Shown piece after piece: positions 18,515 to 53,268 of a stretch of DNA of 64,000 bases. The translations under genes and the position numbers were made by a program. Location of the stretch: positions 62,001 to 126,000 of the IMG/VR virus record IMGVR_UViG_3300007513_000004; one strand, given 5' to 3'. Below the pieces are notes generated by a model. It was not told where the DNA came from, made no database searches, and saw only the letters and a list, made by a program, of their open reading frames with translations. Within the stretch, counting starts at the first letter, position 1, and the number at the start of each line of letters is the position of its first letter.

Positions 18515-19167
18515 TAATCGTCTAAAAGATCTTCAAATCGATTTACATATTTGTAAGAAGCATTTACGGTTAATTCTCCAGAAGTATTTCCTATATTTTC
18601 CAATGTTTGCGTTACGTTTACTCCGCCTCGGCCACTATATCGTCCGCCAACATCCTCTGGGTCTTCTGGATCCTCAGGGTCTAGAGGTTCGGGATCAGGG
18701 CATGGTGGGCAAGGGCCAGAATGATCTAGGTTGTTCACAAGAGCCTTTAGGCTGTCTAGCCCTTGATGCATAGAGAGAAGATTTGATGTAACTTTTTCAT
18801 GAATTTCTTCATCTTCAATTACCGGCTGCGGACCTGCCATGCCAACAAGGGGCGGCTCAGCAGCGGCACCCGGCCGATGCAGTGCCTGAAAAACCACCTC
18901 TCCCAAATCATCTATATCTTGTATGGCTGCCAATATAGCTGCAATATCACTAGTTGTTTCTGAAGATGTTCCACCTTTATCCGTTAAATCATCTGGCTCC
19001 GTACCTGAGTCTGGCTCCGTACCTGAGTCTGGCTCATCTGGAAATATTTTAGTCTCCTCACCTTCTGCTGTTTTGCTTATAATCATATCCACAGTATTTG
19101 CCTCTGCAGTCATGCCTGCTCTGTCAAGTTTATCTGCCAACCATATTAATTCTATTTTTGCATTCAT
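18514..19167 (-). CDS. Acidic, low-complexity tagged protein
   Basis: MNAKIELIWLADKLDRAGMTAEANTVDMIISKTA; EPDSGT repeats; PCPPCP. Confidence 0.75.
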   Translation of the reverse strand: MNAKIELIWLADKLDRAGMTAEANTVDMIISKTAEGEETKIFPDEPDSGTEPDSGTEPDDLTDKGGTSSETTSDIAAILAAIQDIDDLGEVVFQALHRPGAAAEPPLVGMAGPQPVIEDEEIHEKVTSNLLSMHQGLDSLKALVNNLDHSGPCPPCPDPEPLDPEDPEDPEDVGGRYSGRGGVNVTQTLENIGNTSGELTVNASYKYVNRFEDLLDD

Positions 19168-19188: not shown

Positions 19189-19725
19189 TTAATCTTTTTT
19201 ATTATCAACATGATCAGAGATAGCCTCTACATGCATGCCTAAAAATCCAAAATCATCTGAAAGATCAGAATCTAATTTTTGCGAAAGAACCCCAGCCTTA
19301 TATGCTATATTATGCGAAAGCTCAAGAGCTTTTTTCAACTCATCTTGTGTTGCAGATTTTTCTTTAAGAATTTCCTTTTCCAAACCAAGTAGTTCATCAG
19401 TTTCCCCAAGAGCCTCCAAGGCTATATCTATAGAGTCCTCATCTACTCCGTCATTCTTTACTTCTTCTCTAAGCATTTTAAAAGCCTTAACCGCTCCAGG
19501 ACATATGTCAAAATGCTCCGTACTTTCTCCATTAAACTCTACTTGCTCGTCTTCTTCTGGAGCATCTTCTTCTGGAGCATCTTCCTCTGGAGCGTCCCCA
19601 CTTACGCCTTCCAGGCCATTAACCAACTTTGTTAATGTAGCCATAATATCATCAACCTTTCCAGCTTCTTTGATCAAGCCTCTTTGGTCTAATTCATTTG
19701 CTAAATTTATAAGTTTTTCTAACAT
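19189..19725 (-). CDS. Acidic tagged protein
   Basis: MLEKLINLANELDQRGLIKEAGKVDDIM; EEDAP repeats; FDICPGA. Confidence 0.8.
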   Translation of the reverse strand: MLEKLINLANELDQRGLIKEAGKVDDIMATLTKLVNGLEGVSGDAPEEDAPEEDAPEEDEQVEFNGESTEHFDICPGAVKAFKMLREEVKNDGVDEDSIDIALEALGETDELLGLEKEILKEKSATQDELKKALELSHNIAYKAGVLSQKLDSDLSDDFGFLGMHVEAISDHVDNKKD

Positions 19726-33595: not shown

Positions 33596-33817
33596 ATGAA
33601 TAATGAATTAATTAAACTAGCAAATCATTTAGACAAAAAGGGCTTTCACAAAGAAGCTGATTTCTTAGATTCAATTATAAAAACCGCTTTAAATACCTCG
33701 TATCCAGAAGGCGGAGGAACCCGGTCTAATATACGCAAACTATGGGAACGAGTAAATGCTATCGAAAAACAGCTTGCTCTTTTAGATGAATCAACCCATA
33801 CACATCCGGATCCATAA
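33596..33817 (+). CDS. 73-aa tagged micro-protein
   Basis: MNNELIKLANHLDKKGFHKEADFLDSIIKTA plus ~42-aa cargo; cleanest tag copy. Confidence 0.8.
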   Translation: MNNELIKLANHLDKKGFHKEADFLDSIIKTALNTSYPEGGGTRSNIRKLWERVNAIEKQLALLDESTHTHPDP

Positions 33818-34677: not shown

Positions 34678-36015
34678 CTAACTAATCTGATACCCAGCAT
34701 TCTTCAGCGCCGAGTTATGGCACATAATTCCAGGCGTTGATCCAGACAGCTCTGTCCAATCCTCTATTTCTCCACTTTCATCTGCTCCAAAAATATATGT
34801 TTCCGGACCAGACATCGGCACCTCATTGGCTGACACTACAACGTGTGTGTGACCATCCAATGGTTCGCTTAACTCATAAAGGGCAGCATCTCCTCTGAAA
34901 TTATCCAAGGTTTTTATACGCTTTGCCGTTTTGCTTTTTGACAATTGCTCTGCATCCAAAAGATTCTGCCCCCGACCATGATAGGGTTTTTCGGTCATAG
35001 TGTTTAAAGAAACACCCCTATCTGCCCAAGGCTTATCCCAAGGCTTATCGTCAGAACTTATTTGGCTTACCATTTGACTTACCATTTCATCCATTCTTCC
35101 CTCTGGATGCGATCCGGGACGAGCTTGAACATCAGACGTTGGGTCAAGATCATCTTTTAGCTGCTGTACTTCATCGCCTATTCTTTCGTCAACCTCTGCA
35201 GCAATCTCCTCAGGATCTTTGGAGCTTCCGGAGTCAGCAGCGCCTTCTCCGAGGCCATACCAATCCCAATTAGCCTCACCCTCTTCGTCGTCATCCCACG
35301 AGGGTGCATCTACTTCTTTTGTTCTTTTCGCAACCAATGTAGCCTCAAGAACTGCCGAGCCTTCCCAGACACAGCCGGAGGCCACATCCCAACCATAATA
35401 CCACATACTACTGTGCCTAAAGCTATACTGATAAGGGCAGATCTCAATGCCAGAATATTTCATAGCAACTTTTGCCCAATCAATAGTCTTCCCCCAAGAA
35501 CTATCTGGAACCGAATACTCTCTCTCAAAGGCGACAAACTCTTGCTCATTCGTTATCATAAGCATTCTGCTTTCATCAACCTTGAAAGAATAAACATAAC
35601 CACCAATCCATTGTGGCATCTCATAAGTCAGCCAGCTAATCCACTCATTTCCGCATGCATACCAAATGCCCGAAGGTTTTGGTCCCTTTTGTTGCGCAGG
35701 AAAGTTTGGAATTCTAGTCAACTCTTCTGCCGCCATAGTTATTCTGTTATTTTGATTATCCCCTATTAACTCTGTAAGCTGTGTATAATTTGCCTCTTTA
35801 TCCTTTTTTTCAGGAATATTTACCTTCAGATCTTGAGTCTCTTCTTTCAGCTTCGCTAGTTCTTCCGGAATCCTTCTTGCCATTCCTAATTTATCAAAGT
35901 GGTATGCCAACTTATCGCAGACATCAGCCTCTCTAATCATTCCTTTTTGATCAAACTTATTAGACAGATCTATCAACTCATTGATATTTAATTTTGAAAT
36001 GGCAGCTTTATCCAT
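34678..36015 (-). CDS. Tagged two-domain protein (KPxGIW...IDW...WDVASG domain plus C-terminal phage domain)
   Basis: Tag NELIDLSNKFDQKGMIREADVCDKLA; acidic linker between two globular domains. Confidence 0.75.
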   Translation of the reverse strand: MDKAAISKLNINELIDLSNKFDQKGMIREADVCDKLAYHFDKLGMARRIPEELAKLKEETQDLKVNIPEKKDKEANYTQLTELIGDNQNNRITMAAEELTRIPNFPAQQKGPKPSGIWYACGNEWISWLTYEMPQWIGGYVYSFKVDESRMLMITNEQEFVAFEREYSVPDSSWGKTIDWAKVAMKYSGIEICPYQYSFRHSSMWYYGWDVASGCVWEGSAVLEATLVAKRTKEVDAPSWDDDEEGEANWDWYGLGEGAADSGSSKDPEEIAAEVDERIGDEVQQLKDDLDPTSDVQARPGSHPEGRMDEMVSQMVSQISSDDKPWDKPWADRGVSLNTMTEKPYHGRGQNLLDAEQLSKSKTAKRIKTLDNFRGDAALYELSEPLDGHTHVVVSANEVPMSGPETYIFGADESGEIEDWTELSGSTPGIMCHNSALKNAGYQIS

Positions 36016-41952: not shown

Positions 41953-42558
41953 TTATAACCATATGACATCTTTAAAATTCCACATAGGTTTAAAAAAATT
42001 TTCAATTTTCTTTTTATCATCATCTGTAATAACCCCATCGGGTGCTAGAACTATCTTATCATTACCCTTTGGAGCAGGCTTGCCCTCCGGTCGAGAAGGT
42101 GACTTCGTTTTTTCTCGCCACTCTTCATCACTATCATTAACAGGAACATACCCAACGGCAATAAGGTTATGGCCCTGCGGAATATGCTTCACATCTTCTT
42201 CTTCGTCTTCTGGATCCACAGTAGTTTTGGCGCTTGGTACGATTATAACATCCCAGCCCATATCGTCAGCAGGATTATTTACCTCTGTAAACTCTCCATA
42301 GTGAAAAGGCATCTTCTTGCGAAGTTTTTGTCCAAACCTTTTTTTGCTGCCCTTTGGATTGTCTAGAAATATAAATTTACCCGGATTTTCATCCAGGTAT
42401 TCCAAAACACTATCAATGCCCTCTACGTCTATCTCCTCGGTAGGATAATCTATTCCGGGCATAGAGCATATTTTTATAATGCGTTTTATTTTAAGTGCAT
42501 CATTAGAAAGGCCAAGTTTCTTAAGCTGTTTAACAAGAAGCTTTAACCTTGAAATCAC
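41953..42558 (-). CDS. Tagged inorganic pyrophosphatase-like protein
   Basis: Tag MISRLKLLVKQLKKLGLSNDALKIKRIIKICS; NPKGS, MPFHYGEF, ADDMGWDVII, NDKIVL, IENFF as in family I PPase. Confidence 0.7.
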   Translation of the reverse strand: MISRLKLLVKQLKKLGLSNDALKIKRIIKICSMPGIDYPTEEIDVEGIDSVLEYLDENPGKFIFLDNPKGSKKRFGQKLRKKMPFHYGEFTEVNNPADDMGWDVIIVPSAKTTVDPEDEEEDVKHIPQGHNLIAVGYVPVNDSDEEWREKTKSPSRPEGKPAPKGNDKIVLAPDGVITDDDKKKIENFFKPMWNFKDVIWL

Positions 42559-44012
42559 TTTCTAAATCTCCGCATCTTGCCGCTTGGAATGCCGCCGGGC
42601 GTTAATGATTTTACTGTAACATGAAAATGATCTGTCTCTCTAAGAATATCAACTGTAGCCATCTTTTGAGCTTCAAACAAAACCTCTTTGATATTACTCC
42701 CAAGCCTAATATCAAGAGACTTGCCTCCCCTATGACCAGTTTTGGGCCAAGATTCTGCAATTACTTTTTCTGCAGCTTTTCTTTTACCCTCTGCCTCTGC
42801 AGACCCCGAAAAAATAGATACAATCTCACTAATTCTTGGAAACTTTCTATATAGACTTGAAAGATACTTGTTAGCCCTGTTGCTGCCTACCCCTCTTCTT
42901 TTGTAATTGTTATACATAATCCTTGCTTGATCATAAGGGCCTCTATAAGCGCTTGTTATTTTAACCTTTGCATTCATTTGACTGGCAGCATTATTAATTA
43001 TCTTCAGAAGCTCATGCAACATAGGAGAGCCTCCATCAACATCTACCCGGCTGCTTGTAAACTGTACATGAGTTAAGCTATCAGATAATTCGGATGAACA
43101 ATTTGGAGAACAACTTCTTTGCCACTCTCGACCCCCAAGCCTCTCCTGCCTCTGCATCCTTCGATGTTCTCGCCTAGATTCTACAGGAAATGGTTTGGGA
43201 TTTGAAATAAGAGTAGATAGCGTTGCCTTATCAACAATGCCGGTTGTTGGCAATTTATTTTCCTGCTGAAACCTAACAACCGCATCTGCCGTTATATCTC
43301 CAAACTTTCCATCAACACCGTAGCTTCCCAGGTTATATCCTAACCCTTCGAGTCTTTGTTGAATATAAGCTACTTGATCACGATTTTCATGATCCTTTGT
43401 TATATTAAGGTTTGGATCGATATCCATGGTTTCTTTTACTACAGTAGGATCTTTTCTCTCAAAAACCTCTGAAGACTTTAAATATTCACTGTTGTATTTT
43501 GATGATTTTTCAACTAAATCTTGAATAAAAAATTTAAAATACGCTGGATCTTCCTCTTTGTTGTTAATAACTGTTTCTATTTCTAATTTTATTGCATTTG
43601 AACTAAAGTTTTTATCTTGCAATTTATCACTAGATAATATTCTTAAAATTTCATAAGAAGTTTCTGGTCCTACTTTGGATCGAAACTCTCTAATAGATAC
43701 TGTCAAATCAGATGCTGCAACATTAAGATTTGCAACTTTATAAAGACCGCCAATACTATCGGCTCTATCCTTCGAGCCCAAAGAACCTATATTTGTGTCG
43801 GCATTCATACTATAGCCCATTTCTATAAGTTTTTTTTCAACGATAGGCGAAGGCGTGGCAGCTAGAACCCACCTTCTTCTTTCTTCATCCGAACGTAATT
43901 CGTCCAAAGAGGTCAAACCCATGTCTGCCATCATAGTTTCCAAATACTTTCTTCTTTCAGATTTTCTTGGATTTCCGAAGTCTTTTATTATTTTGAATTT
44001 TCTTTTGGGCAT
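42555..44012 (-). CDS. PG-binding domain + peptidase M15-like cell-wall hydrolase
   Basis: IQQRLEGLGY...DGKFGDITADAVVRFQ; ITSAYRGPYDQ, H-x6-D (GHRGGKSLD), DHFHV. Confidence 0.8.
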   Translation of the reverse strand: MPKRKFKIIKDFGNPRKSERRKYLETMMADMGLTSLDELRSDEERRRWVLAATPSPIVEKKLIEMGYSMNADTNIGSLGSKDRADSIGGLYKVANLNVAASDLTVSIREFRSKVGPETSYEILRILSSDKLQDKNFSSNAIKLEIETVINNKEEDPAYFKFFIQDLVEKSSKYNSEYLKSSEVFERKDPTVVKETMDIDPNLNITKDHENRDQVAYIQQRLEGLGYNLGSYGVDGKFGDITADAVVRFQQENKLPTTGIVDKATLSTLISNPKPFPVESRREHRRMQRQERLGGREWQRSCSPNCSSELSDSLTHVQFTSSRVDVDGGSPMLHELLKIINNAASQMNAKVKITSAYRGPYDQARIMYNNYKRRGVGSNRANKYLSSLYRKFPRISEIVSIFSGSAEAEGKRKAAEKVIAESWPKTGHRGGKSLDIRLGSNIKEVLFEAQKMATVDILRETDHFHVTVKSLTPGGIPSGKMRRFRK

Positions 44013-44399: not shown

Positions 44400-44876
44400 A
44401 TGTTAAAAGAAAATGTTATACGAAATTTTGACAACGGAACAATCGAATACGATGATCTTGTTAAACGAATAGAAAAATTAACCTTAGAAGGTTATGATGT
44501 ATTTATAGGAACCGATTCTCAAGTTATAAAAACAAAGCTATCTATTGTAACGTGCGTATGTCTTTATAAAAACGGAACAGGTAAATCTCAAATATTTTAT
44601 GTAAAGAACAGATTGCCTGCAAAGAATTATCCCACACTAAGATCCAGAATGCTCTTTGAAGCTTATAAGAGCCTGGAGGCAGCCCTTGACGTTGATCCCT
44701 ATGCTGCGGGTCGGCTAACCGTCCATCTCGATATAGGATCAGATTTTAAGAAATGCAAGACTGCCAAGTTCAAAAAAGAACTGCAAATACTTGTGCGATC
44801 TCAAGGGTTTGGCTGTGAAGTTAAGCCAAACAGTTGGGCCAGCAGCGCCGTAGCTGATAGGTTTACGAAAACCTAA
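44400..44876 (+). CDS. YkuK-like RNase H-fold protein
   Basis: VFIGTDSQ, RMLFEAYKS, VHLDIG, KPNSWASSAVADR. Confidence 0.85.
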   Translation: MLKENVIRNFDNGTIEYDDLVKRIEKLTLEGYDVFIGTDSQVIKTKLSIVTCVCLYKNGTGKSQIFYVKNRLPAKNYPTLRSRMLFEAYKSLEAALDVDPYAAGRLTVHLDIGSDFKKCKTAKFKKELQILVRSQGFGCEVKPNSWASSAVADRFTKT

Positions 44877-47161
44877 TTAGATTTAAGAGCTGCGACTTCT
44901 GCCTGAAGCTCTTCGATCATAACTTGCTGCTCTTGAATTGCAGAGACAAGAAATGGAAGAATTCCGTTAAAGTCTAAACTCAACGGCTTACCATCAAACT
45001 CTGGATCTAAATCTTTCGGATCCAAAACAAGATCTGGAACAAGCTCTGCAATCTCTTGCGCTATAAATCCATACTTGCTCTTATTAAGAGCAACGTCATT
45101 TATGCCTGGCTTTAGTCTGTTGGCTAAAAATTCTTCATTCCAATTATAAGAGACTGCTCGCATTCCGAGAACTTTTTCTAAACCATTATCTATGGTAGAT
45201 ATATTTGTTTTCATATTTCTATCTGAAAGATAACTAATAGAGGAAATAATGCCTACGCCTATCGATATTGCACCGTTTGATGCTATAGTAAAGTCTCCGA
45301 TATCTCCGGATATAGCCCCAGAAGTTGCAACATTCATATACCCCATTGCCACCGACCCATTAGCAGCTACGGATATCTGACCTATATCTACCGCAGAAGT
45401 TATATCTCCACTGCCATTCATTGTAAAGCCATTGTCAAAAACAACTCCGCCACCGACCTGGGTCACAACGGAGGATGCAAACTGAGCATAATCACCTATA
45501 TGATCTACGCCTCCAGAGCTATACATATCCATGCCATTAAATTTGAGTTCTTCTGTAGCATGAGACAAATTATAAGTTGATGTATTAAATCTTAAATTGC
45601 CCATATACTCTGTGCTTCCAGAGCTATACATGTCCATGCCATTCATCTTGATATTTGCTGAAACATGAGACAAGTCATAAGTTGATGTATCAAATCTTAA
45701 ACTGCCCATATAATCTGTATTTCCAGATCTATACACATCCAAGCCATTAACGGTAAAGTCTCCAGAGTCTAAGTACATATCCAATGTTGATGTATTAAAT
45801 CTTAAGTTTCCAAACTCAAAAATACCTGCATCCATCCGGAAGGGCAAAGTGTTAATACTTATCATATCCGGAATGCCAAGATCTTTAATTCCATCGTCCC
45901 AATTTAGAAAAGATACATCAATCAAACCAATATCATATGCATTGGTTGATATATTGGAAGCCATGTCGGTAATGCTTTCGCCATCGAACATAAGACCCCC
46001 TAAGTCGCTTGTAAGATCCCTTGTTACAGTATTAAACTTTAAGTCTCCAATCATAAAGTCATTACCATCCAGCCCCCAGGCTTGGCCATTGATTGTTCCA
46101 AGACCGGTTGAGAAGGTTAAGGCTCCATCAAGCACGCTCAGCATATCAGCATCTTTTAGAGTTATATTGCCCATCGACTGGTGGCCACCATAAGCTCTCA
46201 ACTCAATGCCCCCTGTTCTAAAGAACTGCGACTCATCAATTGGATTCATGCCCAAGTTATCTTGATCAACTCGAAGAATCATTCCAATATCATTGGCTAT
46301 ATCTCCAAATCTAAGAGTATAGGGATTATCCTCTGGCGGGCCTTCCCAGGGGCCTGGCATCCCCGGCCAATCTATAACAAACATATCCGTTAAATCTATA
46401 TGAAGATATTCATCCCATGCTATATAGTTTTCTGGATTGAATTGAAACTTTGGAAACAAAGTAGATTCATCAAATTGAATCCCGCCTTGAAAATCATTAG
46501 CACCATCATAAACGCCAAAGGAAGGGCCGTCAACCTTGATGGTATAGCCTCCAGGGGTGTCGGCAATTAACGATCCGGTAACTTCGCCCGTAAGGTCTCC
46601 CGTCACATTGGCATACAGCCTTCCATTTCCACTGTTAAGAGATATGTTTCCAGTGCTTGCATCACAAGTAATTTTAGAAGATGTTTTTGGTCCCAAGCCC
46701 GAGTGGGAAGCTGCTGTCCAAATGCCCAGATAAGAGCTAGAGTTTGTTGTCGTGGAAACTGATATGGTATCAGGAATGATATTTGCGCTACCGTCAAAAG
46801 ATACTCCTCCAATGGTTCTTGCAGTTTCTAAAATAGTTGCTGCGGCAGCAATAGTTGCTGTAGCAGCGTTGCCCGTGCAGGAGCTTGATGATCCAGTCAC
46901 ATTGCCTGTCACATCCCCTGTTACATCCCCTGTAAACCCACCAGTTGCGGATACGGCCCCAGAAGCAGTCAGGCTTGCTGCAGAAATAGCGCTCGAAGAA
47001 GCTGTTATGCTTCCGCTGCTCACAATCAAACCGCCGCTGCTTATTGTTAGGCCAGACGCCAACTCCAAAGCTCCGCCAAACTCTATATCGTTGGCATCAA
47101 GAGTTATACTCCCATCTGTTACTTTTATAGTGTGACTGCCCGAATATCTATCCGTTGACAT
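44873..47161 (-). CDS. Tail fibre with C-terminal intramolecular chaperone (peptidase S74)
   Basis: GDVTG repeats, ARTIGGVSFDGSANI, ~30-aa internal repeats, SDRNMKTNI...GFIAQE...LVSAIQE. Confidence 0.88.
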   Translation of the reverse strand: MSTDRYSGSHTIKVTDGSITLDANDIEFGGALELASGLTISSGGLIVSSGSITASSSAISAASLTASGAVSATGGFTGDVTGDVTGNVTGSSSSCTGNAATATIAAAATILETARTIGGVSFDGSANIIPDTISVSTTTNSSSYLGIWTAASHSGLGPKTSSKITCDASTGNISLNSGNGRLYANVTGDLTGEVTGSLIADTPGGYTIKVDGPSFGVYDGANDFQGGIQFDESTLFPKFQFNPENYIAWDEYLHIDLTDMFVIDWPGMPGPWEGPPEDNPYTLRFGDIANDIGMILRVDQDNLGMNPIDESQFFRTGGIELRAYGGHQSMGNITLKDADMLSVLDGALTFSTGLGTINGQAWGLDGNDFMIGDLKFNTVTRDLTSDLGGLMFDGESITDMASNISTNAYDIGLIDVSFLNWDDGIKDLGIPDMISINTLPFRMDAGIFEFGNLRFNTSTLDMYLDSGDFTVNGLDVYRSGNTDYMGSLRFDTSTYDLSHVSANIKMNGMDMYSSGSTEYMGNLRFNTSTYNLSHATEELKFNGMDMYSSGGVDHIGDYAQFASSVVTQVGGGVVFDNGFTMNGSGDITSAVDIGQISVAANGSVAMGYMNVATSGAISGDIGDFTIASNGAISIGVGIISSISYLSDRNMKTNISTIDNGLEKVLGMRAVSYNWNEEFLANRLKPGINDVALNKSKYGFIAQEIAELVPDLVLDPKDLDPEFDGKPLSLDFNGILPFLVSAIQEQQVMIEELQAEVAALKSN

Positions 47162-47189: not shown

Positions 47190-47756
47190 TTAATAGTAGA
47201 CTTGATTCATCTGCTCTATTCGCCTTTTAATACGTCTTTTGAGCTTTTTAATTTTACGAGTATACATATCTCTTTTAAGCTTGCTAACCTTATCCAGCAA
47301 GGTTACTCCATCCAAATGATCTAATTCATGCTGAACAACAACAGCTTCGGCCCCAAAGAGTTCCTCTTCCTTTTCTTCGCCAAGCGGAGTTACATACTGA
47401 ACCTTTATTGACTCGCTTCTTTCGACATCAAGTATAAATCCCGGCAGGGATAGGCACCCCTCCTGAAAGGTTATGGTTTCTTCCGATTTGCTAACAACTT
47501 TTGGATTTACCATCATCAACGGATTCGATCCAGCATCTGCAACAAGAAGTCTTCTTGAGTCTCCAACCTGAATGCCGGCAAGCCCAACCCCATTTAGCTC
47601 ATACATCTTACTCAACATACCCTTCATGTGGGCCTCTAACTCTTCTCCCAAATCATCCTCATGAACATCATCGCTCACATCTCTAAGGCTAGAACTGGGT
47701 GCAAAAACAATATTTACTTCACTCATAATAATTTCTCCTTTCATCATTTGTATCAA
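47190..47756 (-). CDS. def: Peptide deformylase
   Basis: GVGLAGIQ, EGCLS, QHELDHLDG; likely start at MSEVNI (47726). Confidence 0.95.
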   Translation of the reverse strand: MIQMMKGEIIMSEVNIVFAPSSSLRDVSDDVHEDDLGEELEAHMKGMLSKMYELNGVGLAGIQVGDSRRLLVADAGSNPLMMVNPKVVSKSEETITFQEGCLSLPGFILDVERSESIKVQYVTPLGEEKEEELFGAEAVVVQHELDHLDGVTLLDKVSKLKRDMYTRKIKKLKRRIKRRIEQMNQVYY

Positions 47757-47970
47757 TAATCCATCCAGCTATTGAAGAAGCAGTATCTACAAATAGGAAT
47801 GGAAATATAGCGTGTATAAGACATACTACTCCAGCGAACAAAAGAGATATGCTAAAAAATATTGCAACAACACAATGTTTTATATATGACTCTCCAACGC
47901 TATTAGGGTGTTCTGTAAATAATCTTTTAAAAGATTTAAAAACATCTTTTAAAAATTCTTTCATTATCAA
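47719..47970 (-). CDS. DUF6356-like small membrane protein
   Basis: FTEHPNSVGESYIKH...IHAIFPFLF..TAS. Confidence 0.75.
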   Translation of the reverse strand: MIMKEFLKDVFKSFKRLFTEHPNSVGESYIKHCVVAIFFSISLLFAGVVCLIHAIFPFLFVDTASSIAGWIIDTNDERRNYYE

Positions 47971-48497
47971 TCCTCATATATAGATCCTTCGAAATCGTAT
48001 CTGGCCTCTTTCCCATTAAAGAACCCTATTCTCGCATCCAACTCTACTCCGTCAACTTCGTTGATTCCCACGCCAAGTAATTCATTCGAATAAACAGGGC
48101 TGGTTTCCTCTGTGGTTGACACTGTTATATGAGGAATGCTGTTTGAAGAGGCTACCCCAGCAACCATAACGGCCTGGCCTCGATCATCTTCATTGTATCC
48201 AATAATTTTTAACTTAACAATCTTTCCATCTATTGGCAAAGCTAGAACCTCTTCTTCCGATGGTTTAAACTTTATAGTCATATGGTGCATAAAATGCTTA
48301 GAATGAAGCTCCTTCTGAACTACGGTTCCCCACCAATTTTCCAACATTTCTTTACCAGATGGTGTTAAAAATGCCGCAGTATATAAGGCTTTCTTTTTCT
48401 TTTTTGCATATTTTATAATTTCTTCTACAGACTTTAAATATGCAGAGCCACCTTCTTTTTCTATTTTATCTTTTAATTCCTCTAATGCTTTAATCAT
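47967..48497 (-). CDS. 2H phosphoesterase (cyclic phosphodiesterase-like), with divergent tag
   Basis: Two HxT motifs, HHMTIKF and PHITVS; N-terminal MIKALEELKDKIEKEGG...EEIIKYA. Confidence 0.8.
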   Translation of the reverse strand: MIKALEELKDKIEKEGGSAYLKSVEEIIKYAKKKKKALYTAAFLTPSGKEMLENWWGTVVQKELHSKHFMHHMTIKFKPSEEEVLALPIDGKIVKLKIIGYNEDDRGQAVMVAGVASSNSIPHITVSTTEETSPVYSNELLGVGINEVDGVELDARIGFFNGKEARYDFEGSIYED

Positions 48498-50848
48498 ATT
48501 ATCTCCATATTATCTAAATAATCTGCCTCTTCAATAAGGCCTCTCTCATCTAACTCGTTTGCTACTGTAATTAATTTTTTTAATATACTCACTTTATCAT
48601 TCGACGCCTTTACTCGAAGCGATTCTTTGGGTTTAGCGCTAATGCTTACTCTATAAATAGTTACTTTTGAATGAAGATCTGGACCATAAACGTTTTCTAG
48701 TATATTATTTACATCATTTATATATTTCAAATTATCGTCATAAAATTTTATTGAACTTACAGAATCTTGCTGTGCAATTTGTCCAATTATATGCGCCTTA
48801 TATTTTCCACTAGAAATATTGGTTGGCTTTGTAAATATAGATATAGGAAGCTTAAGGCCAACGCTTGTGAGTCGATCCATTATACCCTCTGCCATACCTT
48901 CTCTTGTTTCTCTTGCTGTCAATATAACGGCGTTATCACTATGAGTCTTGTATGTGTTTAAAATCTCTTCATTCGGTATGGTCCCCAATGTTTTAGGGCT
49001 TTGATAAAACACAGCGTCTCCAGCTACAACCGCTTGCTCGGGAACATACTTGCCCCTTAAATCAAATGCTTTCAAATTTTTTGATGAAAAATATTTTTTC
49101 AACATCGGAATTCCTATTGGGCTTCCGCTTTCGTCGGAAAGAACAAACACTACCTGCCTATCCTTTCCAAGCATAGGTAAATCCACAATCCTCTTTATAA
49201 GCCTAAGGTTTCCCACCTCTTGCCTATATGAGTCTGCCAACCCTTGTATTTCTTTTCCCTTTTTATCTTTTTTGATTAATTCTACATGATTTTCATTAGC
49301 TCTTTGCACAAAAGAAATAGCCTTATGAAACATATTTGGAAGGTCCATGTCTACAGAGGTTGCATCACCCTCCTCGTTGGTCTCCACTATAGTGTGCCAC
49401 TCAGGAGTCCAGAACAGTGTGTCATCCATATCAAAAATATACACTTCTCCACTAAGCGGTGGAATAGGTATATTTAGTGGATTTTCTATTTTATCACCAT
49501 TCAAAGAATGCGCTTTTTTTATATGATTATTTAAAAAATTAGTCTCAGAAAATTTTCCAAGTTTGCTTAATTCTAAAGAAAGCTTAATCAATTTTTCTGT
49601 TATATCAGAACTGGCCTCAGATATTCCTTCAGTATTCTCTGGATTTTTTTCAAAATAAGCATCAACCTCAGCGCTCCTAATGGCTTCGCCCATCTCTGGC
49701 CCAGGCTTCATACCTCCCGCTATAAGATCTCGCGCAGATACAACCGGTGGGGCAGATGCAAAGTTTATAAACTTATTAAAGTCCTGCCCTATAGCCCCTC
49801 CAAAGTCCATTATTGCCTCGTTGCTCATAATTGTCTTTGAAGCTTTTTTCATTCGTATCAACTCTCTCTTTAGTCCGATTAAACTTTCGGCATTTAATTT
49901 AGTTAAATTTAAGAGAAATTTTACAGAATCTTTTATATCATTTCCATATTTCTTTTGAAACAAAACATTAGCTACATCGCTACTATTGTTTTCTTGAAGA
50001 ATCGTAGCAAGTTGAACAGCAACATTTCTGCTTGAAGATATTGCTTTAGAAACTTTTAATCCTGGCAATATTTGTGGAAACAAATCAAAATCTTTTAACA
50101 TATTAATATAATGAGATGGAGACTTTGATGTTTTAATTCCTTTTTTTACTTCATCCTGAATTCTTTCATCAGAAACCGCTGCTTCACTATTCTCTGTAAG
50201 TGAATTATTACTTCTAATTGCATTAGCAGTTTCTTCATCAACCTCTCCGCCCATTCTTCCTGCAAATCTAAAGGCTCTAAGGATTCTTAAACGATCTTCT
50301 CCGAATCTTTCATCAGGATCTCCAACGGTTCTTATAACCTCATTCTTAATGTCGTCTATTCCACCAACATAGTCAACGACCTCTCCCGCAACTCCATCCT
50401 CCCTCTCTTTGCGTGTTGGAATTCTATAAAACAAAGCATTTATGGTGAGATCTCGACGCATTGCGTCATCTTTTATTGATAACGGATTCTCTTTTGTGGA
50501 AAGGGTGGCCTCACCACCCATCCTGGTTCCGCGCTCTACTCGATATGGAGCAAATTCATACTCGTTTCCATCATAAGCTATCATCCTTGCTACTGCGAAT
50601 GACTTTTCGCCCTGAACCCCTATGCGCTTAACGTACGGGCTTAAAATTCTAATGACATCTTCCGGAGTTGCGTTTGTTGCTATATCATAATCCTTTGGAG
50701 ACTTTCCAAGAATGGTGTCCCTTACTGCTCCTCCAGCAATGTACATTTCAAATCCAGCAGAAGCCATTACATCCCTTAGTTGATAAAGGCTTTCAGGAAT
50801 TTCCATAGGAATTTCCATTATAATTGGATTATCAAAAGCTTCAGACAT
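48494..50848 (-). CDS. cca: Class II tRNA nucleotidyltransferase (CCA/poly(A) polymerase family) fused via a tag to an RNA-repair-type HAD phosphatase
   Basis: GGAVRD..LG..PKDYDIAT, RRDLTINAL, EDRLRILRAFRF, ERI..E; then FDMDDTLF, ILTAR, K, FYDD (HAD); internal and C-terminal tags. Confidence 0.85.
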   Translation of the reverse strand: MSEAFDNPIIMEIPMEIPESLYQLRDVMASAGFEMYIAGGAVRDTILGKSPKDYDIATNATPEDVIRILSPYVKRIGVQGEKSFAVARMIAYDGNEYEFAPYRVERGTRMGGEATLSTKENPLSIKDDAMRRDLTINALFYRIPTRKEREDGVAGEVVDYVGGIDDIKNEVIRTVGDPDERFGEDRLRILRAFRFAGRMGGEVDEETANAIRSNNSLTENSEAAVSDERIQDEVKKGIKTSKSPSHYINMLKDFDLFPQILPGLKVSKAISSSRNVAVQLATILQENNSSDVANVLFQKKYGNDIKDSVKFLLNLTKLNAESLIGLKRELIRMKKASKTIMSNEAIMDFGGAIGQDFNKFINFASAPPVVSARDLIAGGMKPGPEMGEAIRSAEVDAYFEKNPENTEGISEASSDITEKLIKLSLELSKLGKFSETNFLNNHIKKAHSLNGDKIENPLNIPIPPLSGEVYIFDMDDTLFWTPEWHTIVETNEEGDATSVDMDLPNMFHKAISFVQRANENHVELIKKDKKGKEIQGLADSYRQEVGNLRLIKRIVDLPMLGKDRQVVFVLSDESGSPIGIPMLKKYFSSKNLKAFDLRGKYVPEQAVVAGDAVFYQSPKTLGTIPNEEILNTYKTHSDNAVILTARETREGMAEGIMDRLTSVGLKLPISIFTKPTNISSGKYKAHIIGQIAQQDSVSSIKFYDDNLKYINDVNNILENVYGPDLHSKVTIYRVSISAKPKESLRVKASNDKVSILKKLITVANELDERGLIEEADYLDNMEII

Positions 50849-50881: not shown

Positions 50882-51139
50882 CTATAAAGCTGCTGAGCTT
50901 TTAACCAGGAGTGTGGGTGCATGTAATTCCTCTCTTAATAAAAATTCTATTGAACTAAGAGTATATCCAAGAGAGCTTGGGCATCCATGACACCCTCCCA
51001 TAAAATCAAGCGTAATCTCCCAACTATCTCCGCATGGATCTATGCTGTTTAACTCAACATATCCGCCATGCGAGGCTAAGCCTGGGTTTATTTGCTCATC
51101 TATTATCTTTATAACATCATCTTTTATCTTGCAAGACAT
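50882..51139 (-). CDS. NifU-C/NfuA-like Fe-S carrier
   Basis: INPGLASHGGYVEL, GGCHGCPSS. Confidence 0.88.
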   Translation of the reverse strand: MSCKIKDDVIKIIDEQINPGLASHGGYVELNSIDPCGDSWEITLDFMGGCHGCPSSLGYTLSSIEFLLREELHAPTLLVKSSAAL

Positions 51140-51186: not shown

Positions 51187-53268
51187 CTATACAGTTTTCA
51201 TTATATTTCTACACTTTGGAAAGCCGGAGCACCCATAAAACTTCCCATACTTTCCCGTTCTTTCTACCATCTCACTCTTCTTACACTTCGGACAAGTTAC
51301 ACCCGTCTTTTTTACCTTCGGCTTTTTCTTTACGACAACTTCTTCATTTTCGCCTATTGCTGCTGTAAACTTACATGCAGGATATGACTTGCACCCGTAA
51401 AAATCACCGTTTCTTCCGGCTCTCCTTATTAAAATATTTGAACAGTCTGGACACTTATGTCCGGTTTCTATCGCTTCTTTCGCCTTATCTTCTCCGCTTA
51501 TTGAAAGTGTTCCGTCACAATTCGGCCAGTCTAAACATCCCAAGAACGGACCATGTTTCGATATCTTTTTAACCATTTTAGAAGAGCACTTTGGACACTC
51601 AACATCTACAACAAAAGCGTCTGGAAGACTCGATGTTGTCGCACTATTGATTTGAGAATCTAGATCTTCATTAAATAACTTAAGAGTATCTATATAATCA
51701 AGCTGACCATCTGCTATCTTGTCTAAGTTTTGCTCCATTCTAGAAGTAAACTTTGTATCAACAATGGATGGAAAATTTGCAGATAAATAATCAGAAACCA
51801 TTATTCCGATCTCAGTGGCCGCTAATGATTTCTTCTGTCTTTCTACATACTTCCTCTTTAATAACGTATCTATAATTGAAGCATACGTACTTGGCCTTCC
51901 AACGCCTTCTTTTTCTAACATCTTAACAATTGATGCATCAGAAAATCTGGGCGGAGGCTTTGTAAAGTGTTGTGAAGGAATAACTTCATCCCATGGTAAT
52001 TTTTGACCAACCGAAAGAACAGGAAGTATGACATCACTCTTGGTCTCTCCATAAACCTTTAAGAAGCCGTCGAAAATTAATGTACTTCCATTCTTTTTAA
52101 AGTTGTATGCATCCTTTTTCCCAGGATACTTCAATTTCACAGCGACTTGTTCAAATTGTGCATCTGTCATTTGAGATGCTGTAAACCTATCGTCAATTAA
52201 CTTTAAAAGCTTTTTCTCATCCGAATTCAAAGCAGATACCGGCGAGTCATAAGTAGGCCTGATAGCTTCGTGCGCATCTTGCGATGAAGACTTTGGTCCA
52301 TAATTTATAGTATTTGCAGATAAATACTTTTTACCATGATCATTCTTTATCTTTACTCTAAGGTCTTTTATTTTTTGCGGATCAGACCTAGTGCTATCAG
52401 TTCTGTGATATGTAATCAATCCGTTACCAAACAAACTTTGTGCAATACTCATAGTCTTTTTTGCACCCCAGCCGAAGCTGTTGCTCGCAGCCTGTTGAAG
52501 TGTAGAGGTTATAAAGGGAGGGGCAGGTTTTCTGCTCCTCTTTTTGTTTGTATGCTCTGTAACAACAAGGTCTAACTTATCACCATTCATAGCAGAAACA
52601 ATCTTATCTGCTTCAGCTTTATTCTTTATCTTAAAATCTTTGCCGTTAACTCCCCAGAAATCTACATTAAATCCAGAATTTGTTTCAACAATTATTTCCC
52701 AATATTCCTCTGGAGTAAAGGCTCTTATCTCCTTTTCTCTATCGGAGATAACCTTAAGAGCCACAGACTGCACTCTGCCAGCGCTGGTGCCTCTAAGGCC
52801 CTTGTTCCACATAACAGGGCTAACCTTAAAGCCAACAAGCCTGTCGGTTATCCTGCGAGCCTGCTGTGCATTATATAGATTGTCATCCAGTATTTCTGGA
52901 TTCTTAATAGCTTTCTTTACAGCTTCTTTGGTTATTGCGTTAAACCTTGTACGATGAACCTTAACTCCTCGTTTTGGCAACAAGGTTGCCAAGTGAAAAG
53001 CGATTGCTTCACCCTCCCTATCCGGGTCTGTTGCTATATAGATAACTTCGTGATTTTTTGCTTCACGTTTTATTTCTTTCGCAATATCTTTTTTATCTGT
53101 ATTTACTTTGTATGTTGCTTCAAACGTTTCTATGTCTATACCCATCTGCTTTTTGGACAGATCCATAATGTGACCAACGGAGGCCATAATGGTATAGCTA
53201 TTTCCAAGAATTTTTCTTAGTTTAGAAATCTTATTTGGAGACTCTATAAGTACGAGTGGCATGATCAA
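51187..53268 (-). CDS. topA: DNA topoisomerase I (type IA) with C-terminal zinc ribbons
   Basis: IESPNK, ASVGHI, ATDPDREGEAIA, SAGRVQS, ITYHRTD, QDAHEAIRPT, GRPSTY, three C4 ribbons. Confidence 0.97.
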   Translation of the reverse strand: MIMPLVLIESPNKISKLRKILGNSYTIMASVGHIMDLSKKQMGIDIETFEATYKVNTDKKDIAKEIKREAKNHEVIYIATDPDREGEAIAFHLATLLPKRGVKVHRTRFNAITKEAVKKAIKNPEILDDNLYNAQQARRITDRLVGFKVSPVMWNKGLRGTSAGRVQSVALKVISDREKEIRAFTPEEYWEIIVETNSGFNVDFWGVNGKDFKIKNKAEADKIVSAMNGDKLDLVVTEHTNKKRSRKPAPPFITSTLQQAASNSFGWGAKKTMSIAQSLFGNGLITYHRTDSTRSDPQKIKDLRVKIKNDHGKKYLSANTINYGPKSSSQDAHEAIRPTYDSPVSALNSDEKKLLKLIDDRFTASQMTDAQFEQVAVKLKYPGKKDAYNFKKNGSTLIFDGFLKVYGETKSDVILPVLSVGQKLPWDEVIPSQHFTKPPPRFSDASIVKMLEKEGVGRPSTYASIIDTLLKRKYVERQKKSLAATEIGIMVSDYLSANFPSIVDTKFTSRMEQNLDKIADGQLDYIDTLKLFNEDLDSQINSATTSSLPDAFVVDVECPKCSSKMVKKISKHGPFLGCLDWPNCDGTLSISGEDKAKEAIETGHKCPDCSNILIRRAGRNGDFYGCKSYPACKFTAAIGENEEVVVKKKPKVKKTGVTCPKCKKSEMVERTGKYGKFYGCSGFPKCRNIMKTV

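What the first reader, a model, noticed from the sequence alone, without database searches (positions are those of the whole stretch)
47967..50848. Tagged tRNA 3'-end repair kit: CCA enzyme - tag - HAD phosphatase - tag, coupled to a tagged 2H phosphoesterase
Seen: a class II nucleotidyltransferase is fused to a DxDxT HAD domain (FDMDDTLF/LTAR/FYDD), with a tag exactly at the junction and another at the C-terminus. It overlaps (ATGA) a gene with two HxT motifs. Established: 2H enzymes open 2',3'-cyclic phosphates, HAD phosphatases such as the T4 Pnkp phosphatase remove 3'-phosphates, and CCA enzymes rebuild tRNA ends. In E. coli-type CCA enzymes the healing function is carried by an HD domain, which appears replaced here. 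Inference: this is a complete heal-and-rebuild pathway against host nucleases or toxins that damage tRNA 3' ends. The tags suggest it may be delivered as protein at infection, before translation is attacked.
Basis: partly seen in the sequence, partly recalled or inferred. Interest (0 to 1): 0.78.

Follow-up and report, generated by a model that had tools for sequence, protein, structure and literature searches.

The report
Phage tRNA-end repair cassette with peptide tags
An uncultured marine jumbo phage fuses a CCA-adding type tRNA nucleotidyltransferase to a T4-Pnkp-like phosphatase and couples it to a cyclic-phosphodiesterase gene. Together these look like a ligase-free kit for cleaning and rebuilding damaged tRNA 3' ends; the peptide "tags" are real but their role is unknown.

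Summary
Gene 48494..50848 (-) encodes a 784-aa protein with three parts:
- a class II CCA-type nucleotidyltransferase (residues 1-403);
- a helical hairpin linker;
- a HAD phosphatase (466-737) in which all four catalytic motifs are invariant across orthologs.

Its best solved structural matches for the HAD part are the RNA-repair phosphatases T4 Pnkp and Pnkp1. The gene overlaps, by ATGA, a 176-aa 2H phosphoesterase of the CNPase/Trl1-CPD type.

The link between the genes is strong. All five related contigs checked keep CCA-HAD followed directly by 2H. Some relatives fuse all three domains into one protein. Other phage lineages show CCA-2H fusions, or CCA next to a HAD_SAK_1-2H protein.

All 9 tRNAs and the tmRNA of this phage already encode CCA, and no RNA ligase was found in the 223 kb held. 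This favours repair of tRNA 3' ends over tRNA maturation or break sealing.

The tags are only partly as described:
- The C-terminal tag is a strong match.
- The junction tag is a degenerate relic.
- The N-terminus of the 2H protein is not a recognisable tag.

The tag itself is a widespread, unannotated module of about 30 aa (3,469 protein clusters). Delivery of the proteins at infection is unsupported.

Verdict: a new architecture built from known RNA-repair parts.

The parts
48494..50848 (-). Gene for the 784-aa fusion protein: CCA-type nucleotidyltransferase, hairpin linker, HAD phosphatase, C-terminal tag
   Evidence: ORF. Domains. RBS-like aaggaag lies upstream of the ATG. 33 ortholog clusters have the same fusion. 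The stretch is identical in Logan contigs of an independent run (X5, a different study), in pieces that do not span it whole.
49640..50848 (-). Class II nucleotidyltransferase, residues 1-403 (head, neck, body, tail). Motifs: GGAVRD...DYD (39-55), RRD (131-133), EDRLR (184-188)
   Evidence: PF01743 E 2e-30 and PF12627 E 2e-7. phrog_2244 tRNA nucleotidyltransferase E 7e-55. AF2 model aligns to CCA-adding enzymes over residues 14-401 with Z 26. Invariant motif residues.
49505..49618 (-). Junction helical hairpin, residues 411-448: a degenerate tag-like linker. Near-identical relatives carry a 331-aa insertion here
   Evidence: Helices 411-429 and 433-448, low pLDDT. Tag-profile score 5.6-10.9 bits, reached by 0-1 of 500 shuffles. 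P0002 has its insertion after residue 443, and contig ends in run X10 read into both insertion borders at 49514 and 49521.
48638..49453 (-). HAD-superfamily phosphatase domain, residues 466-737, with a roughly 160-aa insert between motifs I and II
   Evidence: Motifs I-IV invariant. Best solved matches: T4 Pnkp 3'-phosphatase 5uj0_B Z 14.2 and Pnkp1 4xrp_A Z 13.9; the next HAD scores Z 10.5. Weak HAD_SAK_1 hit, E 0.006-0.015.
49418..49432 (-). HAD motif I, DMDDT (D473 nucleophile, D475 acid/base, T477)
   Evidence: Invariant in 22 orthologs. The roles are assigned by analogy with D165/D167 of T4 Pnkp (PMC3592404).
48503..48586 (-). C-terminal tag, residues 755-782 (ILKKLITVANELDERGLIEEADYLDNME)
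   Evidence: Tag HMM iE 4.9e-15. 46-51 bits, reached by 0 of 500 shuffles. Predicted as two helices.
47967..48497 (-). Gene for the 176-aa 2H phosphoesterase; its start overlaps the upstream stop as ATGA
   Evidence: ORF; overlap. PF08302 tRNA_lig_CPD, 25.0 bits against a cut-off of 23. AF2 model pLDDT 94.3. Matches CNPase, Trl1 CPD domains and LigT.
48276..48284 (-). First HxT motif (H72-M-T74)
   Evidence: H72 and T74 invariant in 31 homologs.
48123..48131 (-). Second HxT motif (H123-I-T125)
   Evidence: H123 invariant; T125 kept in at least 90% of homologs.
48405..48497 (-). N-terminal two-helix extension of the 2H protein (residues 1-31), at the position where some orthologs carry a canonical tag
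   Evidence: Helices 2-15 and 21-31. Not a significant tag match here. Canonical tags in orthologs P0047, P0048, P0057 and P0088.
47190..47756 (-). Peptide deformylase gene. It is a conserved downstream neighbour, not part of the kit
   Evidence: PF01327 E 5e-40. The order Topo I, CCA-HAD, 2H, PDF is kept in L007 and L009; L008 keeps CCA-HAD, 2H, one extra gene, then PDF.

Best explanation
This is a ligase-independent cassette that heals and rebuilds tRNA (and tmRNA) 3' ends. Proposed order of events:
1. A tRNA that has lost part or all of its CCA and ends in a 2',3'-cyclic phosphate is opened by the 2H phosphodiesterase. This end is the product of metal-independent RNases or of spontaneous transesterification. 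The expected product for a CNPase/Trl1-type enzyme is a 2'-phosphate with a 3'-OH.
2. The DxDxT HAD domain removes the remaining 2'- (or 3'-) phosphomonoester through an aspartyl-phosphate intermediate at D473.
3. The fused class II nucleotidyltransferase holds the same tRNA by its body and tail domains and re-adds the missing C, C and A.

The fusion, and the translational coupling to the 2H gene, would keep the three steps on one substrate. The arrangement would do, with unrelated domains, what the HD domain does in E. coli-type CCA enzymes.

What is shown: the domain identities, the conserved catalytic residues, the folds, the gene linkage and fusions, and that the phage's own tRNAs already encode CCA.

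What is inferred: the substrates, the order of the steps, and the purpose, which would be keeping translation running during infection, possibly against a host tRNA-end nuclease.
For: Nucleotidyltransferase
- Profiles and fold (Z 26 to CCA-adding enzymes over residues 14-401) support the assignment.
- Motifs A, B, C and D are invariant.

HAD domain
- All four motifs are invariant.
- The top solved matches are the RNA-repair phosphatases T4 Pnkp and Pnkp1 (Z 14.2 and 13.9), clearly above other HADs (at most 10.5). They were also the first HAD hits by Foldseek.

2H protein
- PF08302 is above its cut-off.
- H72, T74 and H123 are invariant and T125 is near-invariant.
- The fold matches CNPase, the CPD domains of plant and fungal tRNA ligases, and LigT.
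- The nearest viral folds are giant-virus multidomain proteins, one of them named RNA ligase.

Linkage
- 2H lies directly downstream of CCA-HAD in L007, L008, L009, L013 and L014. L013 is 100% identical and may be the same virus.
- P0006 and P0004 fuse CCA-HAD-tag-2H. P0033 fuses CCA-2H-HAD.
- In CCA enzymes only 32-33% identical to this one, L049 and L050 fuse CCA-2H, and L089 has CCA followed by a HAD_SAK_1 (E 2e-40) plus CPD protein.

Repair rather than maturation or sealing
- All 9 tRNAs and the tmRNA encode CCA.
- No Rnl2/DNA-ligase-type (PF09414) or RtcB ligase was found in the 223 kb. The Rnl1 model (PF09511) also found nothing, but it rang in no control genome, so that search is uninformative.

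Precedents
- T4 Pnkp phosphatase acts on 2',3'-cyclic, 3'- and 2'-phosphate ends (PMC3592404).
- Trl1 CPD gives 3'-OH with 2'-PO4 (PMC6379707).
- The HD domain of CCA enzymes removes cyclic phosphates from tRNA 3' ends (PMC10673834, citing Yakunin 2004).
- Jumbo phages are already proposed to use 2H, SAK-HAD and CCA enzymes in RNA repair (PMC7824862).
Against: - There is no biochemical data at all.
- Sequence does not separate CCA-adding from poly(A) polymerase activity: PAP 108.7 bits against CCA 108.5 bits in the PDB. NCBIfam cut-offs are not reached.
- The HAD domain has no sequence-level match to any solved HAD. It hits HAD_SAK_1 only weakly, in 3 of 22 orthologs, so its RNA-end specificity rests on fold ranking alone.
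- The record is only 67% complete, so a ligase could lie in the missing third. A PNK-like AAA_33 kinase exists about 60 kb away.
- T4 Pnkp can open cyclic phosphates by itself, so the need for a separate 2H enzyme is not explained.
- 74 of 80 other phage CCA loci have neither partner within 6 kb.
Confidence: 0.6

Rival explanations
1. The biochemistry is the same, but the purpose is housekeeping rather than counter-defence. The cassette would maintain the pool of host and phage tRNAs and the tmRNA during a long jumbo-phage infection. It would repair ends damaged by ordinary turnover or spontaneous cyclisation, as part of a general investment in translation.
For: The genome also carries 9 tRNAs, a tmRNA and a peptide deformylase that stays syntenic with the cassette. 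No host nuclease or defence system is identified anywhere in the data. In bacteria whose tRNA genes encode CCA, the CCA enzyme serves repair of ordinary damage (PMC10673834, discussion).
Against: Independent re-invention of CCA plus 2H (plus or minus HAD) in several phage lineages, and a rapidly shuffled architecture, are more typical of conflict systems (PMC7824862). Neither point is decisive.
Confidence: 0.22
2. The nucleotidyltransferase is a poly(A) polymerase or another RNA-tailing enzyme. The 2H and HAD domains would heal cyclic-phosphate ends of cleaved RNAs so that they can be tailed and then degraded, serving RNA clearance and nucleotide recycling rather than tRNA repair.
For: E. coli PAP I is the top sequence hit in the PDB by a hair. 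The NCBIfam pcnB subfamily model gives the top score, 157.9 bits. PAP is structurally close as well, Z 24.6.
Against: The best structural matches, and the ones covering the full length, are CCA-adding enzymes. By eye, the PAP-specific motif between motif A and the flexible loop is not kept: the alignment shows RIGVQGEKSFAVARM opposite RLVGRRFRLAHV. PMC10673834 describes this criterion. The pcnB score is far below its cut-off (157.9 against 305.65). From my own knowledge, PAP I is restricted to beta- and gamma-proteobacteria.
Confidence: 0.1
3. The 2H enzyme, with or without the HAD domain, destroys nucleotide immune signals or 2',3'-cNMPs in the manner of Acb1. Its link to the CCA enzyme would be incidental.
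For: Acb1 proteins appear among the viral structural matches (E 7e-4, TM 0.41-0.48). 2H enzymes in phages have been proposed to target cyclic phosphate signals (PMC7824862).
Against: Closer matches are CNPase, Trl1 CPD and giant-virus multidomain proteins, one of them named RNA ligase. PF08302 is the only Pfam family above its cut-off. Covalent fusion of this 2H family to CCA enzymes recurs in several arrangements.
Confidence: 0.06
4. One reading: the tags direct these enzymes into the capsid, so that they are injected with the DNA and act before translation is attacked.
For: The tag sits at the extreme N-terminus of many small proteins in a tandem array. This is loosely reminiscent of capsid-targeting leaders of phage internal proteins (my own knowledge). 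One tagged protein has an ArdC-N domain, a domain known from proteins transferred with DNA (PMC5512222). Tail-fibre genes lie nearby.
Against: There is no virion data. Most CCA-HAD orthologs have no C-terminal tag, and many 2H orthologs have no N-terminal extension, so the tag is dispensable for this cassette. Tags also occur internally and in tiny proteins made only of tags, which fits a docking or assembly module at least as well. Pfam and PHROGs show no clear virion link for tagged proteins.
Confidence: 0.1

Closest known systems
E. coli-type multifunctional CCA-adding/repair enzyme (class II nucleotidyltransferase plus HD domain)
   Same: One polypeptide joins a class II CCA-type nucleotidyltransferase to a phosphohydrolase that can clear 2',3'-cyclic and monoester phosphates from the tRNA 3' end (PMC10673834, citing Yakunin 2004).
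   Different: There is no HD domain here. The healing function is split between a HAD domain, fused C-terminally after a hairpin linker, and a separate or fused 2H enzyme.
T4 polynucleotide kinase-phosphatase (Pnkp) phosphatase domain, and Pnkp1 of the Pnkp1/Rnl/Hen1 complex
   Same: These are the best solved structural matches of the HAD core (Z 14.2 and 13.9). They share DxDxT chemistry and act on RNA 3'-, 2'- and cyclic-phosphate ends (PMC3592404).
   Different: No sequence-level similarity is detectable. This domain has a roughly 160-aa insert between motifs I and II. It has no fused 5'-kinase and no ligase partner; it is fused to a nucleotidyltransferase instead.
Cyclic phosphodiesterase (CPD) domain of fungal and plant tRNA ligase Trl1, and vertebrate CNPase
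   Same: 2H fold with two HxT motifs. PF08302 is above its cut-off, and these are the top fold matches. The expected product is 2'-PO4 with 3'-OH (PMC6379707).
   Different: This is a minimal domain of about 140 aa, standing alone or fused to CCA-HAD rather than to a ligase and kinase. It comes from a phage.
'Swiss Army Knife' HAD (PF10307) plus 2H proteins, and the jumbo-phage RNA-repair toolkit described by Iyer et al. 2021 (PMC7824862)
   Same: The same set of domain types (2H, HAD, CCA enzyme) is proposed there for phage RNA repair. A true HAD_SAK_1-CPD protein lies next to a CCA gene in locus L089.
   Different: That paper treats the SAK HAD as mostly standalone and places 2H and HAD alongside RNA ligases. 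A CCA-HAD(-2H) fusion is not described in the section read. The HAD here is below the PF10307 cut-off (15.5 against 25.6 bits).
Eukaryotic repair of angiogenin-trimmed tRNA CCA ends (ANGEL2 cyclic phosphatase plus TRNT1). This comparison is from my own knowledge and was not checked here
   Same: The logic is the same: remove the 2',3'-cyclic phosphate left at a truncated CCA end, then re-add the nucleotides with the CCA enzyme, with no ligase.
   Different: The phosphatase belongs to an unrelated fold (EEP), the proteins are separate, and the system is cellular rather than viral.

Membership tests
Class II tRNA nucleotidyltransferase (CCA-adding enzyme) | Pol-beta head with motif A (GGxVRD...DxD), motif B (RRD), motif C and motif D (EDxxR) | tested here: met
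   PF01743 E 2e-30. G39-R43, D53, D55, R131-R132, D185 and R188 are invariant in 22 orthologs.
Class II tRNA nucleotidyltransferase (CCA-adding enzyme) | Neck, body and tail domains that hold the tRNA | tested here: met
   The AF2 model aligns over residues 14-401 to full-length CCA-adding enzymes (1miv, 4x4w, 6qy6), Z about 26.
Class II tRNA nucleotidyltransferase (CCA-adding enzyme) | Distinction from bacterial poly(A) polymerase and from CC- or A-adding subtypes | tested here: inconclusive
   PAP and CCA enzymes tie by sequence. All NCBIfam equivalogs are below their cut-offs. The PAP-specific motif is not kept in the alignment, but this is judged by eye.
Class II tRNA nucleotidyltransferase (CCA-adding enzyme) | Adds C, C, A to tRNA 3' ends without a template | not testable with these tools
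   Needs an enzyme assay.
HAD superfamily phosphatase | Motifs I (DxDxT), II (S/T), III (K) and IV (DD) on a Rossmannoid core | tested here: met
   D473, D475, T477, T644, K684, D704 and D705 are invariant. The core superposes on HAD structures with rmsd 2.2-3.4 A.
T4 Pnkp-type polynucleotide 3'-phosphatase family | Closest fold relatives are Pnkp phosphatases | tested here: met
   5uj0_B Z 14.2, 4xrp_A Z 13.9, 2ia5_D Z 12.0. The next HAD scores Z 10.5.
T4 Pnkp-type polynucleotide 3'-phosphatase family | Detectable sequence homology, and fusion to a 5'-kinase | tested here: not met
   The profile of 22 orthologs finds no HAD in the PDB at E up to 10. There is no kinase domain in the protein.
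HAD_SAK_1 (PF10307) | Score above the Pfam gathering cut-off (25.6 bits) | tested here: not met
   15.5-16.8 bits. Only 3 of 22 orthologs hit at E up to 0.1. hhalign against a true member gives 30% probability, over motifs III-IV only.
2H phosphoesterase, tRNA-ligase CPD / CNPase branch (PF08302) | Two H-x-T/S motifs on the 2H fold; score above the cut-off | tested here: met
   25.0 bits against a cut-off of 23. H72, T74 and H123 are invariant and T125 is kept in at least 90% of homologs. Foldseek matches CNPase at 1.5e-5 and Trl1 CPD at 1.5e-4 to 1.9e-3.
2H phosphoesterase, tRNA-ligase CPD / CNPase branch (PF08302) | Hydrolyses an RNA 2',3'-cyclic phosphate to a 2'-phosphate | not testable with these tools
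   Needs an enzyme assay.
E. coli-type CCA/HD repair enzyme | C-terminal HD phosphohydrolase domain | tested here: not met
   No HD family appears among Pfam or NCBIfam hits. PRK10885 matches only positions 2-211 of its profile.
Heal-and-seal RNA repair system (T4 Pnkp plus Rnl type) | RNA ligase and 5'-kinase encoded with the end-healing enzymes | tested here: not met
   PF09414 and PF01139 are absent from the 223 kb. PF09511 also found nothing, but its control was uninformative. The only AAA_33 kinase lies about 60 kb away. The record is only 67% complete.
Anti-CBASS Acb1 (2H) | Closest fold relatives are Acb1 proteins | tested here: not met
   Acb1 ranks sixth or lower among viral matches (E 7e-4) and is absent from the top 50 PDB matches.
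Virion-packaged or injected effector | Presence in particles, or a validated capsid-targeting signal | not testable with these tools
   No isolate and no proteome exist. The tag matches no Pfam or PHROG family.

The most novel reading that the evidence does not exclude
The roughly 30-aa tag (consensus MINELIKLANxLDxKGLxKEADxLDxxIKK) may be a new, self-contained two-helix docking module used by a large uncultured marine phage group. It would assemble or route dozens of otherwise unrelated proteins. In this locus it would hold the CCA-HAD enzyme and its partners together, or take them to a common site: a repair or translation hub, or the capsid. The tags would also be the seams at which modules are inserted, split and fused. 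Supporting observations: a 331-aa module is present or absent exactly at the junction tag in phages whose protein is 97% identical, and a SET domain, a 2H domain or unknown domains are attached after the C-terminal tag in relatives.
Probability: 0.25. Interest if true: 0.8.

Novelty: new variant of a known kind. Interest (0 to 1): 0.6.

Why it matters
If the mechanism holds, this would be a viral, ligase-free pathway devoted to the tRNA 3' end. It would be built from a CCA enzyme, a Pnkp-like HAD and a Trl1-like 2H, and it would be a non-homologous replacement of the HD domain of bacterial CCA enzymes.

It points to damage of tRNA 3' ends as a pressure on marine phages, distinct from anticodon-loop cleavage. 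That would predict host nucleases that trim CCA and leave cyclic phosphates.

The fusion gives a compact, directly testable enzyme for RNA-end chemistry.

Separately, the tag is a widespread protein module (3,469 clusters at 50% identity) with no entry in Pfam or PHROGs. It seems to mark module boundaries in phage proteins, and its function is an open question.

Tried and rejected
- DNA and protein searches of GenBank phages. No phage has the fusion, the 2H protein or the tag. A HAD_SAK_1-2H query found only scattered single-domain hits.
- A DNA-level explanation of the tag (repeat, promoter or cassette end). Rejected: identity by codon position is 0.59/0.76/0.44, and upstream identity is 0.31.
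- tRNA maturation as the role of the CCA enzyme. Rejected: every tRNA and the tmRNA already encode CCA.
- Predicted binding of HAD-plus-tag to the 2H protein. The tool gave no answer (score 0.01), so this is evidence neither for nor against.
- Sequence profile of the HAD domain against the PDB. Nothing relevant.
- hhalign against a true HAD_SAK_1 protein. Only motifs III-IV aligned, at 30% probability.
- Pfam and PHROGs scans of 61 long tagged proteins. Only single, unrelated hits.
- ESM Atlas look-up of a 73-aa tagged protein. Uninformative.
- Literature search for the tag sequence. No relevant paper.
- Burroughs & Aravind 2016 (the RNA-repair systems paper) is not held, so I could not check whether it lists a CCA-HAD architecture.
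- Promoter and terminator scan. Not above chance.
- Scan of 185,579 species genomes for the HAD family. One weak hit only.

Full report
**Setting**

The window is bases 62001-126000 of a 223,402-bp IMG/VR virus record that CheckV rates 67% complete. GC content is about 38%. The same sequence occurs in marine and seawater metagenomes from several independent studies. No GenBank phage resembles the region at DNA level. The part of the genome outside the window carries 9 tRNA genes and a tmRNA gene.

**The genes**

On the minus strand the order is as follows:

| Coordinates | Product |
|---|---|
| 51187..53268 | topoisomerase I |
| 50882..51139 | NifU-like protein |
| 48494..50848 | 784-aa protein (CCA-HAD) |
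| 47967..48497 | 176-aa protein (2H) |
| 47719..47970 | DUF6356 protein |
| 47190..47756 | peptide deformylase |
| 44873..47161 | tail-fibre protein with an S74 chaperone domain |

The 784-aa gene has a good ribosome-binding site. Its stop codon overlaps the start of the 176-aa gene as ATGA.

**The nucleotidyltransferase (residues 1-403)**

- Profiles: PF01743 E 2e-30, PF12627 E 2e-7, phrog_2244 'tRNA nucleotidyltransferase' E 7e-55.
- Motifs A (GGAVRD...DYD), B (RRD), C and D (EDRLR) are invariant across 22 orthologs.
- The AlphaFold model has mean pLDDT 84.8. It superposes on full-length CCA-adding enzymes over residues 14-401: Bacillus 1miv, human TRNT1 4x4w and a psychrophilic enzyme 6qy6, all with Z about 26. 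E. coli poly(A) polymerase follows at Z 24.6.
- By sequence alone, PAP and CCA enzymes tie at 108.7 and 108.5 bits. No NCBIfam equivalog reaches its cut-off.
- In the alignment, the PAP-specific stretch between motif A and the flexible loop is not kept. PMC10673834 describes this criterion. This is my reading by eye.

I call it a CCA-type enzyme with moderate confidence.

**The HAD domain (residues 466-737)**

- The four HAD motifs are invariant: D473/D475/T477, T644 (with R646), K684, and D704/D705.
- A roughly 160-aa insert lies between motifs I and II.
- Pfam gives only a sub-threshold HAD_SAK_1 hit (15.5-16.8 bits against a cut-off of 25.6), seen in 3 of 22 orthologs.
- A profile of the domain finds no solved HAD by sequence.
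- By structure, the best matches are the RNA-repair phosphatases: T4 Pnkp (5uj0_B, Z 14.2, rmsd 2.5 A), Pnkp1 of the Pnkp1/Rnl/Hen1 complex (Z 13.9) and T4 Pnkp 2ia5 (Z 12.0). These stand above all other HADs, which reach at most 10.5. They were also the first HAD hits by Foldseek.
- T4 Pnkp removes 3'-, 2'- and 2',3'-cyclic phosphates from RNA ends (PMC3592404).

**The 2H protein**

- PF08302 (fungal tRNA ligase CPD) scores 25.0 bits against a cut-off of 23.
- Among 31 homologs, H72, T74 and H123 are invariant and T125 is nearly so.
- The model has pLDDT 94.3. It matches CNPase (E 1.5e-5), the CPD domains of Arabidopsis, S. pombe and yeast tRNA ligases, and archaeal and bacterial LigT.
- Among viral models, the nearest are giant-virus multidomain proteins, one of them named RNA ligase. 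Acb1 proteins rank lower.
- Trl1 CPD yields 3'-OH with 2'-PO4 (PMC6379707).

**Linkage**

- The C-terminal half of the 784-aa protein finds 33 protein clusters. All come from metagenomes and nearly all carry the CCA head domain.
- In every related contig examined, the gene directly downstream is the 2H homolog: L007, L008, L009, L013 (100% identical, possibly the same virus) and L014.
- P0006 (929 aa) and P0004 (1300 aa) are single proteins reading CCA-HAD-tag-2H. P0033 reads CCA-2H-HAD followed by a protein-kinase-like end.
- Among 80 other phage CCA loci, L049 and L050 carry a 520-aa CCA-2H fusion. L089 has a CCA gene followed at once by a protein with HAD_SAK_1 (E 2e-40) and CPD domains. 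74 loci have neither partner within 6 kb.

The same three activities have thus been brought together repeatedly and in different orders. This is the strongest evidence that they act on one substrate.

**Repair rather than maturation or sealing**

- All nine tRNA genes and the tmRNA gene end in an encoded CCA.
- No Rnl2/DNA-ligase-type (PF09414) or RtcB ligase is found in the 223 kb. The Rnl1 search was uninformative, because its model rang in no control genome.
- One AAA_33 P-loop kinase lies about 60 kb away.
- A third of the genome is missing, so these absences are not final.

The picture fits a ligase-free pathway confined to the 3' end. Functionally it parallels the HD domain of E. coli-type and mycobacterial CCA enzymes (PMC10673834). 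Iyer et al. (PMC7824862) already list 2H, SAK-HAD and CCA enzymes among jumbo-phage RNA-repair parts. They place the first two beside RNA ligases and describe the SAK HAD as mostly standalone. The fusion seen here is not described in the section I read.

**The tags**

- A profile built from five copies finds 23 ORFs in the genome at iE below 0.01. Most copies sit at the very start of the protein, and 11 tagged genes lie in a tandem array at genome 53-61.7 kb.
- Conservation is at protein level: nucleotide identity by codon position is 0.59/0.76/0.44, and upstream DNA is not conserved.
- In this locus the three claimed tags differ. The C-terminal copy is strong. The junction copy is a weak relic. 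The N-terminus of the 2H protein cannot be told from shuffled sequence, although orthologs carry a canonical tag at that position.
- Most CCA-HAD orthologs have no C-terminal tag at all.
- A profile search of 1.84 billion representative proteins finds 3,469 clusters at E up to 0.001 and 546 at E up to 1e-10.
- In the best 150 proteins there are 220 tags: 123 N-terminal, 24 C-terminal and 73 internal. 61 of these proteins carry more than one tag, and some tiny proteins consist only of tags.
- No Pfam or PHROG family covers the tag, and no paper containing the motif was found.
- A complex prediction between HAD-plus-tag and the 2H protein gave no answer.

The tag is therefore a real, widespread and unnamed module. 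Its function is unknown, and the idea that it marks proteins for injection is untested.

**Module seams**

- P0002, whose protein is 97% identical, has a 331-aa insertion exactly after residue 443, at the end of the junction hairpin. The insertion contains HxxxD and HxH motifs.
- Contigs of an independent run (X10) read from the window sequence into both borders of that insertion, at 49514 and 49521. Several runs show extra depth and broken contigs over 49514-49604.
- Relatives attach a SET domain (P0003), an unknown 370-aa region (P0005) or the 2H domain (P0004, P0006) after the C-terminal tag.

Tags thus coincide with the places where modules are gained, lost, split or fused.

**Verdict**

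The enzymatic reading is well supported by sequence, fold and linkage evidence, but it has not been tested biochemically. It is a new architecture made of known RNA-repair parts. The counter-defence purpose and the delivery idea are inferences. The tag family is the least understood and potentially the most novel element.

Noticed in passing
whole genome G000; in the window 9940-10032 (+), 19060-19161 (-), 19624-19725 (-), 33596-33697 (+), 35887-35988 (-); tandem array at genome 53.0-61.7 kb (L010): A roughly 30-aa two-helix motif (MINELIKLANxLDxKGLxKEADxLDxxIKK) occurs in 23 ORFs of this genome, mostly at the exact N-terminus. Globally it is found in 3,469 representative protein clusters. No Pfam or PHROG family covers it. 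Some proteins consist only of two tags.
   Followed up: partly
window 49514-49521 (after residue 443 of the 784-aa protein): Presence/absence polymorphism. In variant P0002 (97% identical protein), a 331-aa module with HxxxD and HxH motifs (LAS/M23-like, judged by eye; no Pfam hit) is inserted right after the junction hairpin. Contigs of run X10 read into both borders of the insertion.
   Followed up: partly
window 48479 -> 50864 (run X1): One low-depth contig joins these two points and so skips the whole CCA-HAD gene. Only 21 letters lie on the shorter side, so it may come from another strain or be an artefact.
   Followed up: no
genome G000:C1:1878-44629 (outside the window; L012 holds part): The phage carries a tmRNA gene (tag peptide ANNNYYYEPVALAA) and 9 tRNA genes (Gly, Pro, Thr, Asn, Met, Lys x2, Arg, Leu). 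All have an encoded CCA.
   Followed up: partly
window 34678-36015 (-): A 445-aa protein with an N-terminal tag and an ArdC-N (anti-restriction, ssDNA-binding) domain, E 4.5e-5.
   Followed up: no
window 42555-44012 (-) and 27590-30154 (-): Two large endolysin-like proteins by PHROGs. The 485-aa one ends with H..GG.S.D and DHFH motifs, resembling the module inserted into the CCA-HAD protein of relatives. That resemblance is judged by eye only.
   Followed up: no
L093:1354-1854 (-) = genome about 48.5-49.0 kb: A standalone 166-aa P-loop kinase of the AAA_33 (PNK-like) family, about 60 kb from the cassette. It is unknown whether it acts on RNA 5' ends.
   Followed up: no
protein P0033 (metagenomic relative), residues about 1160-1210: A distant relative orders the domains CCA-2H-HAD and ends in a protein-kinase-like segment (Pkinase E 4e-4).
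   Followed up: no
window 47190-47756 (-) and related loci L007-L009: Peptide deformylase stays next to the cassette in related phages: directly after 2H in L007 and L009, one gene further in L008. Topoisomerase I stays upstream in L007 and L009. This suggests a conserved block that includes translation-support genes.
   Followed up: partly
window 41953-42558 (-): A 201-aa protein whose N-terminus (MISRLKLLVKQLKKLGLSNDALKIKRIIK) looks like another degenerate tag.
   Followed up: no
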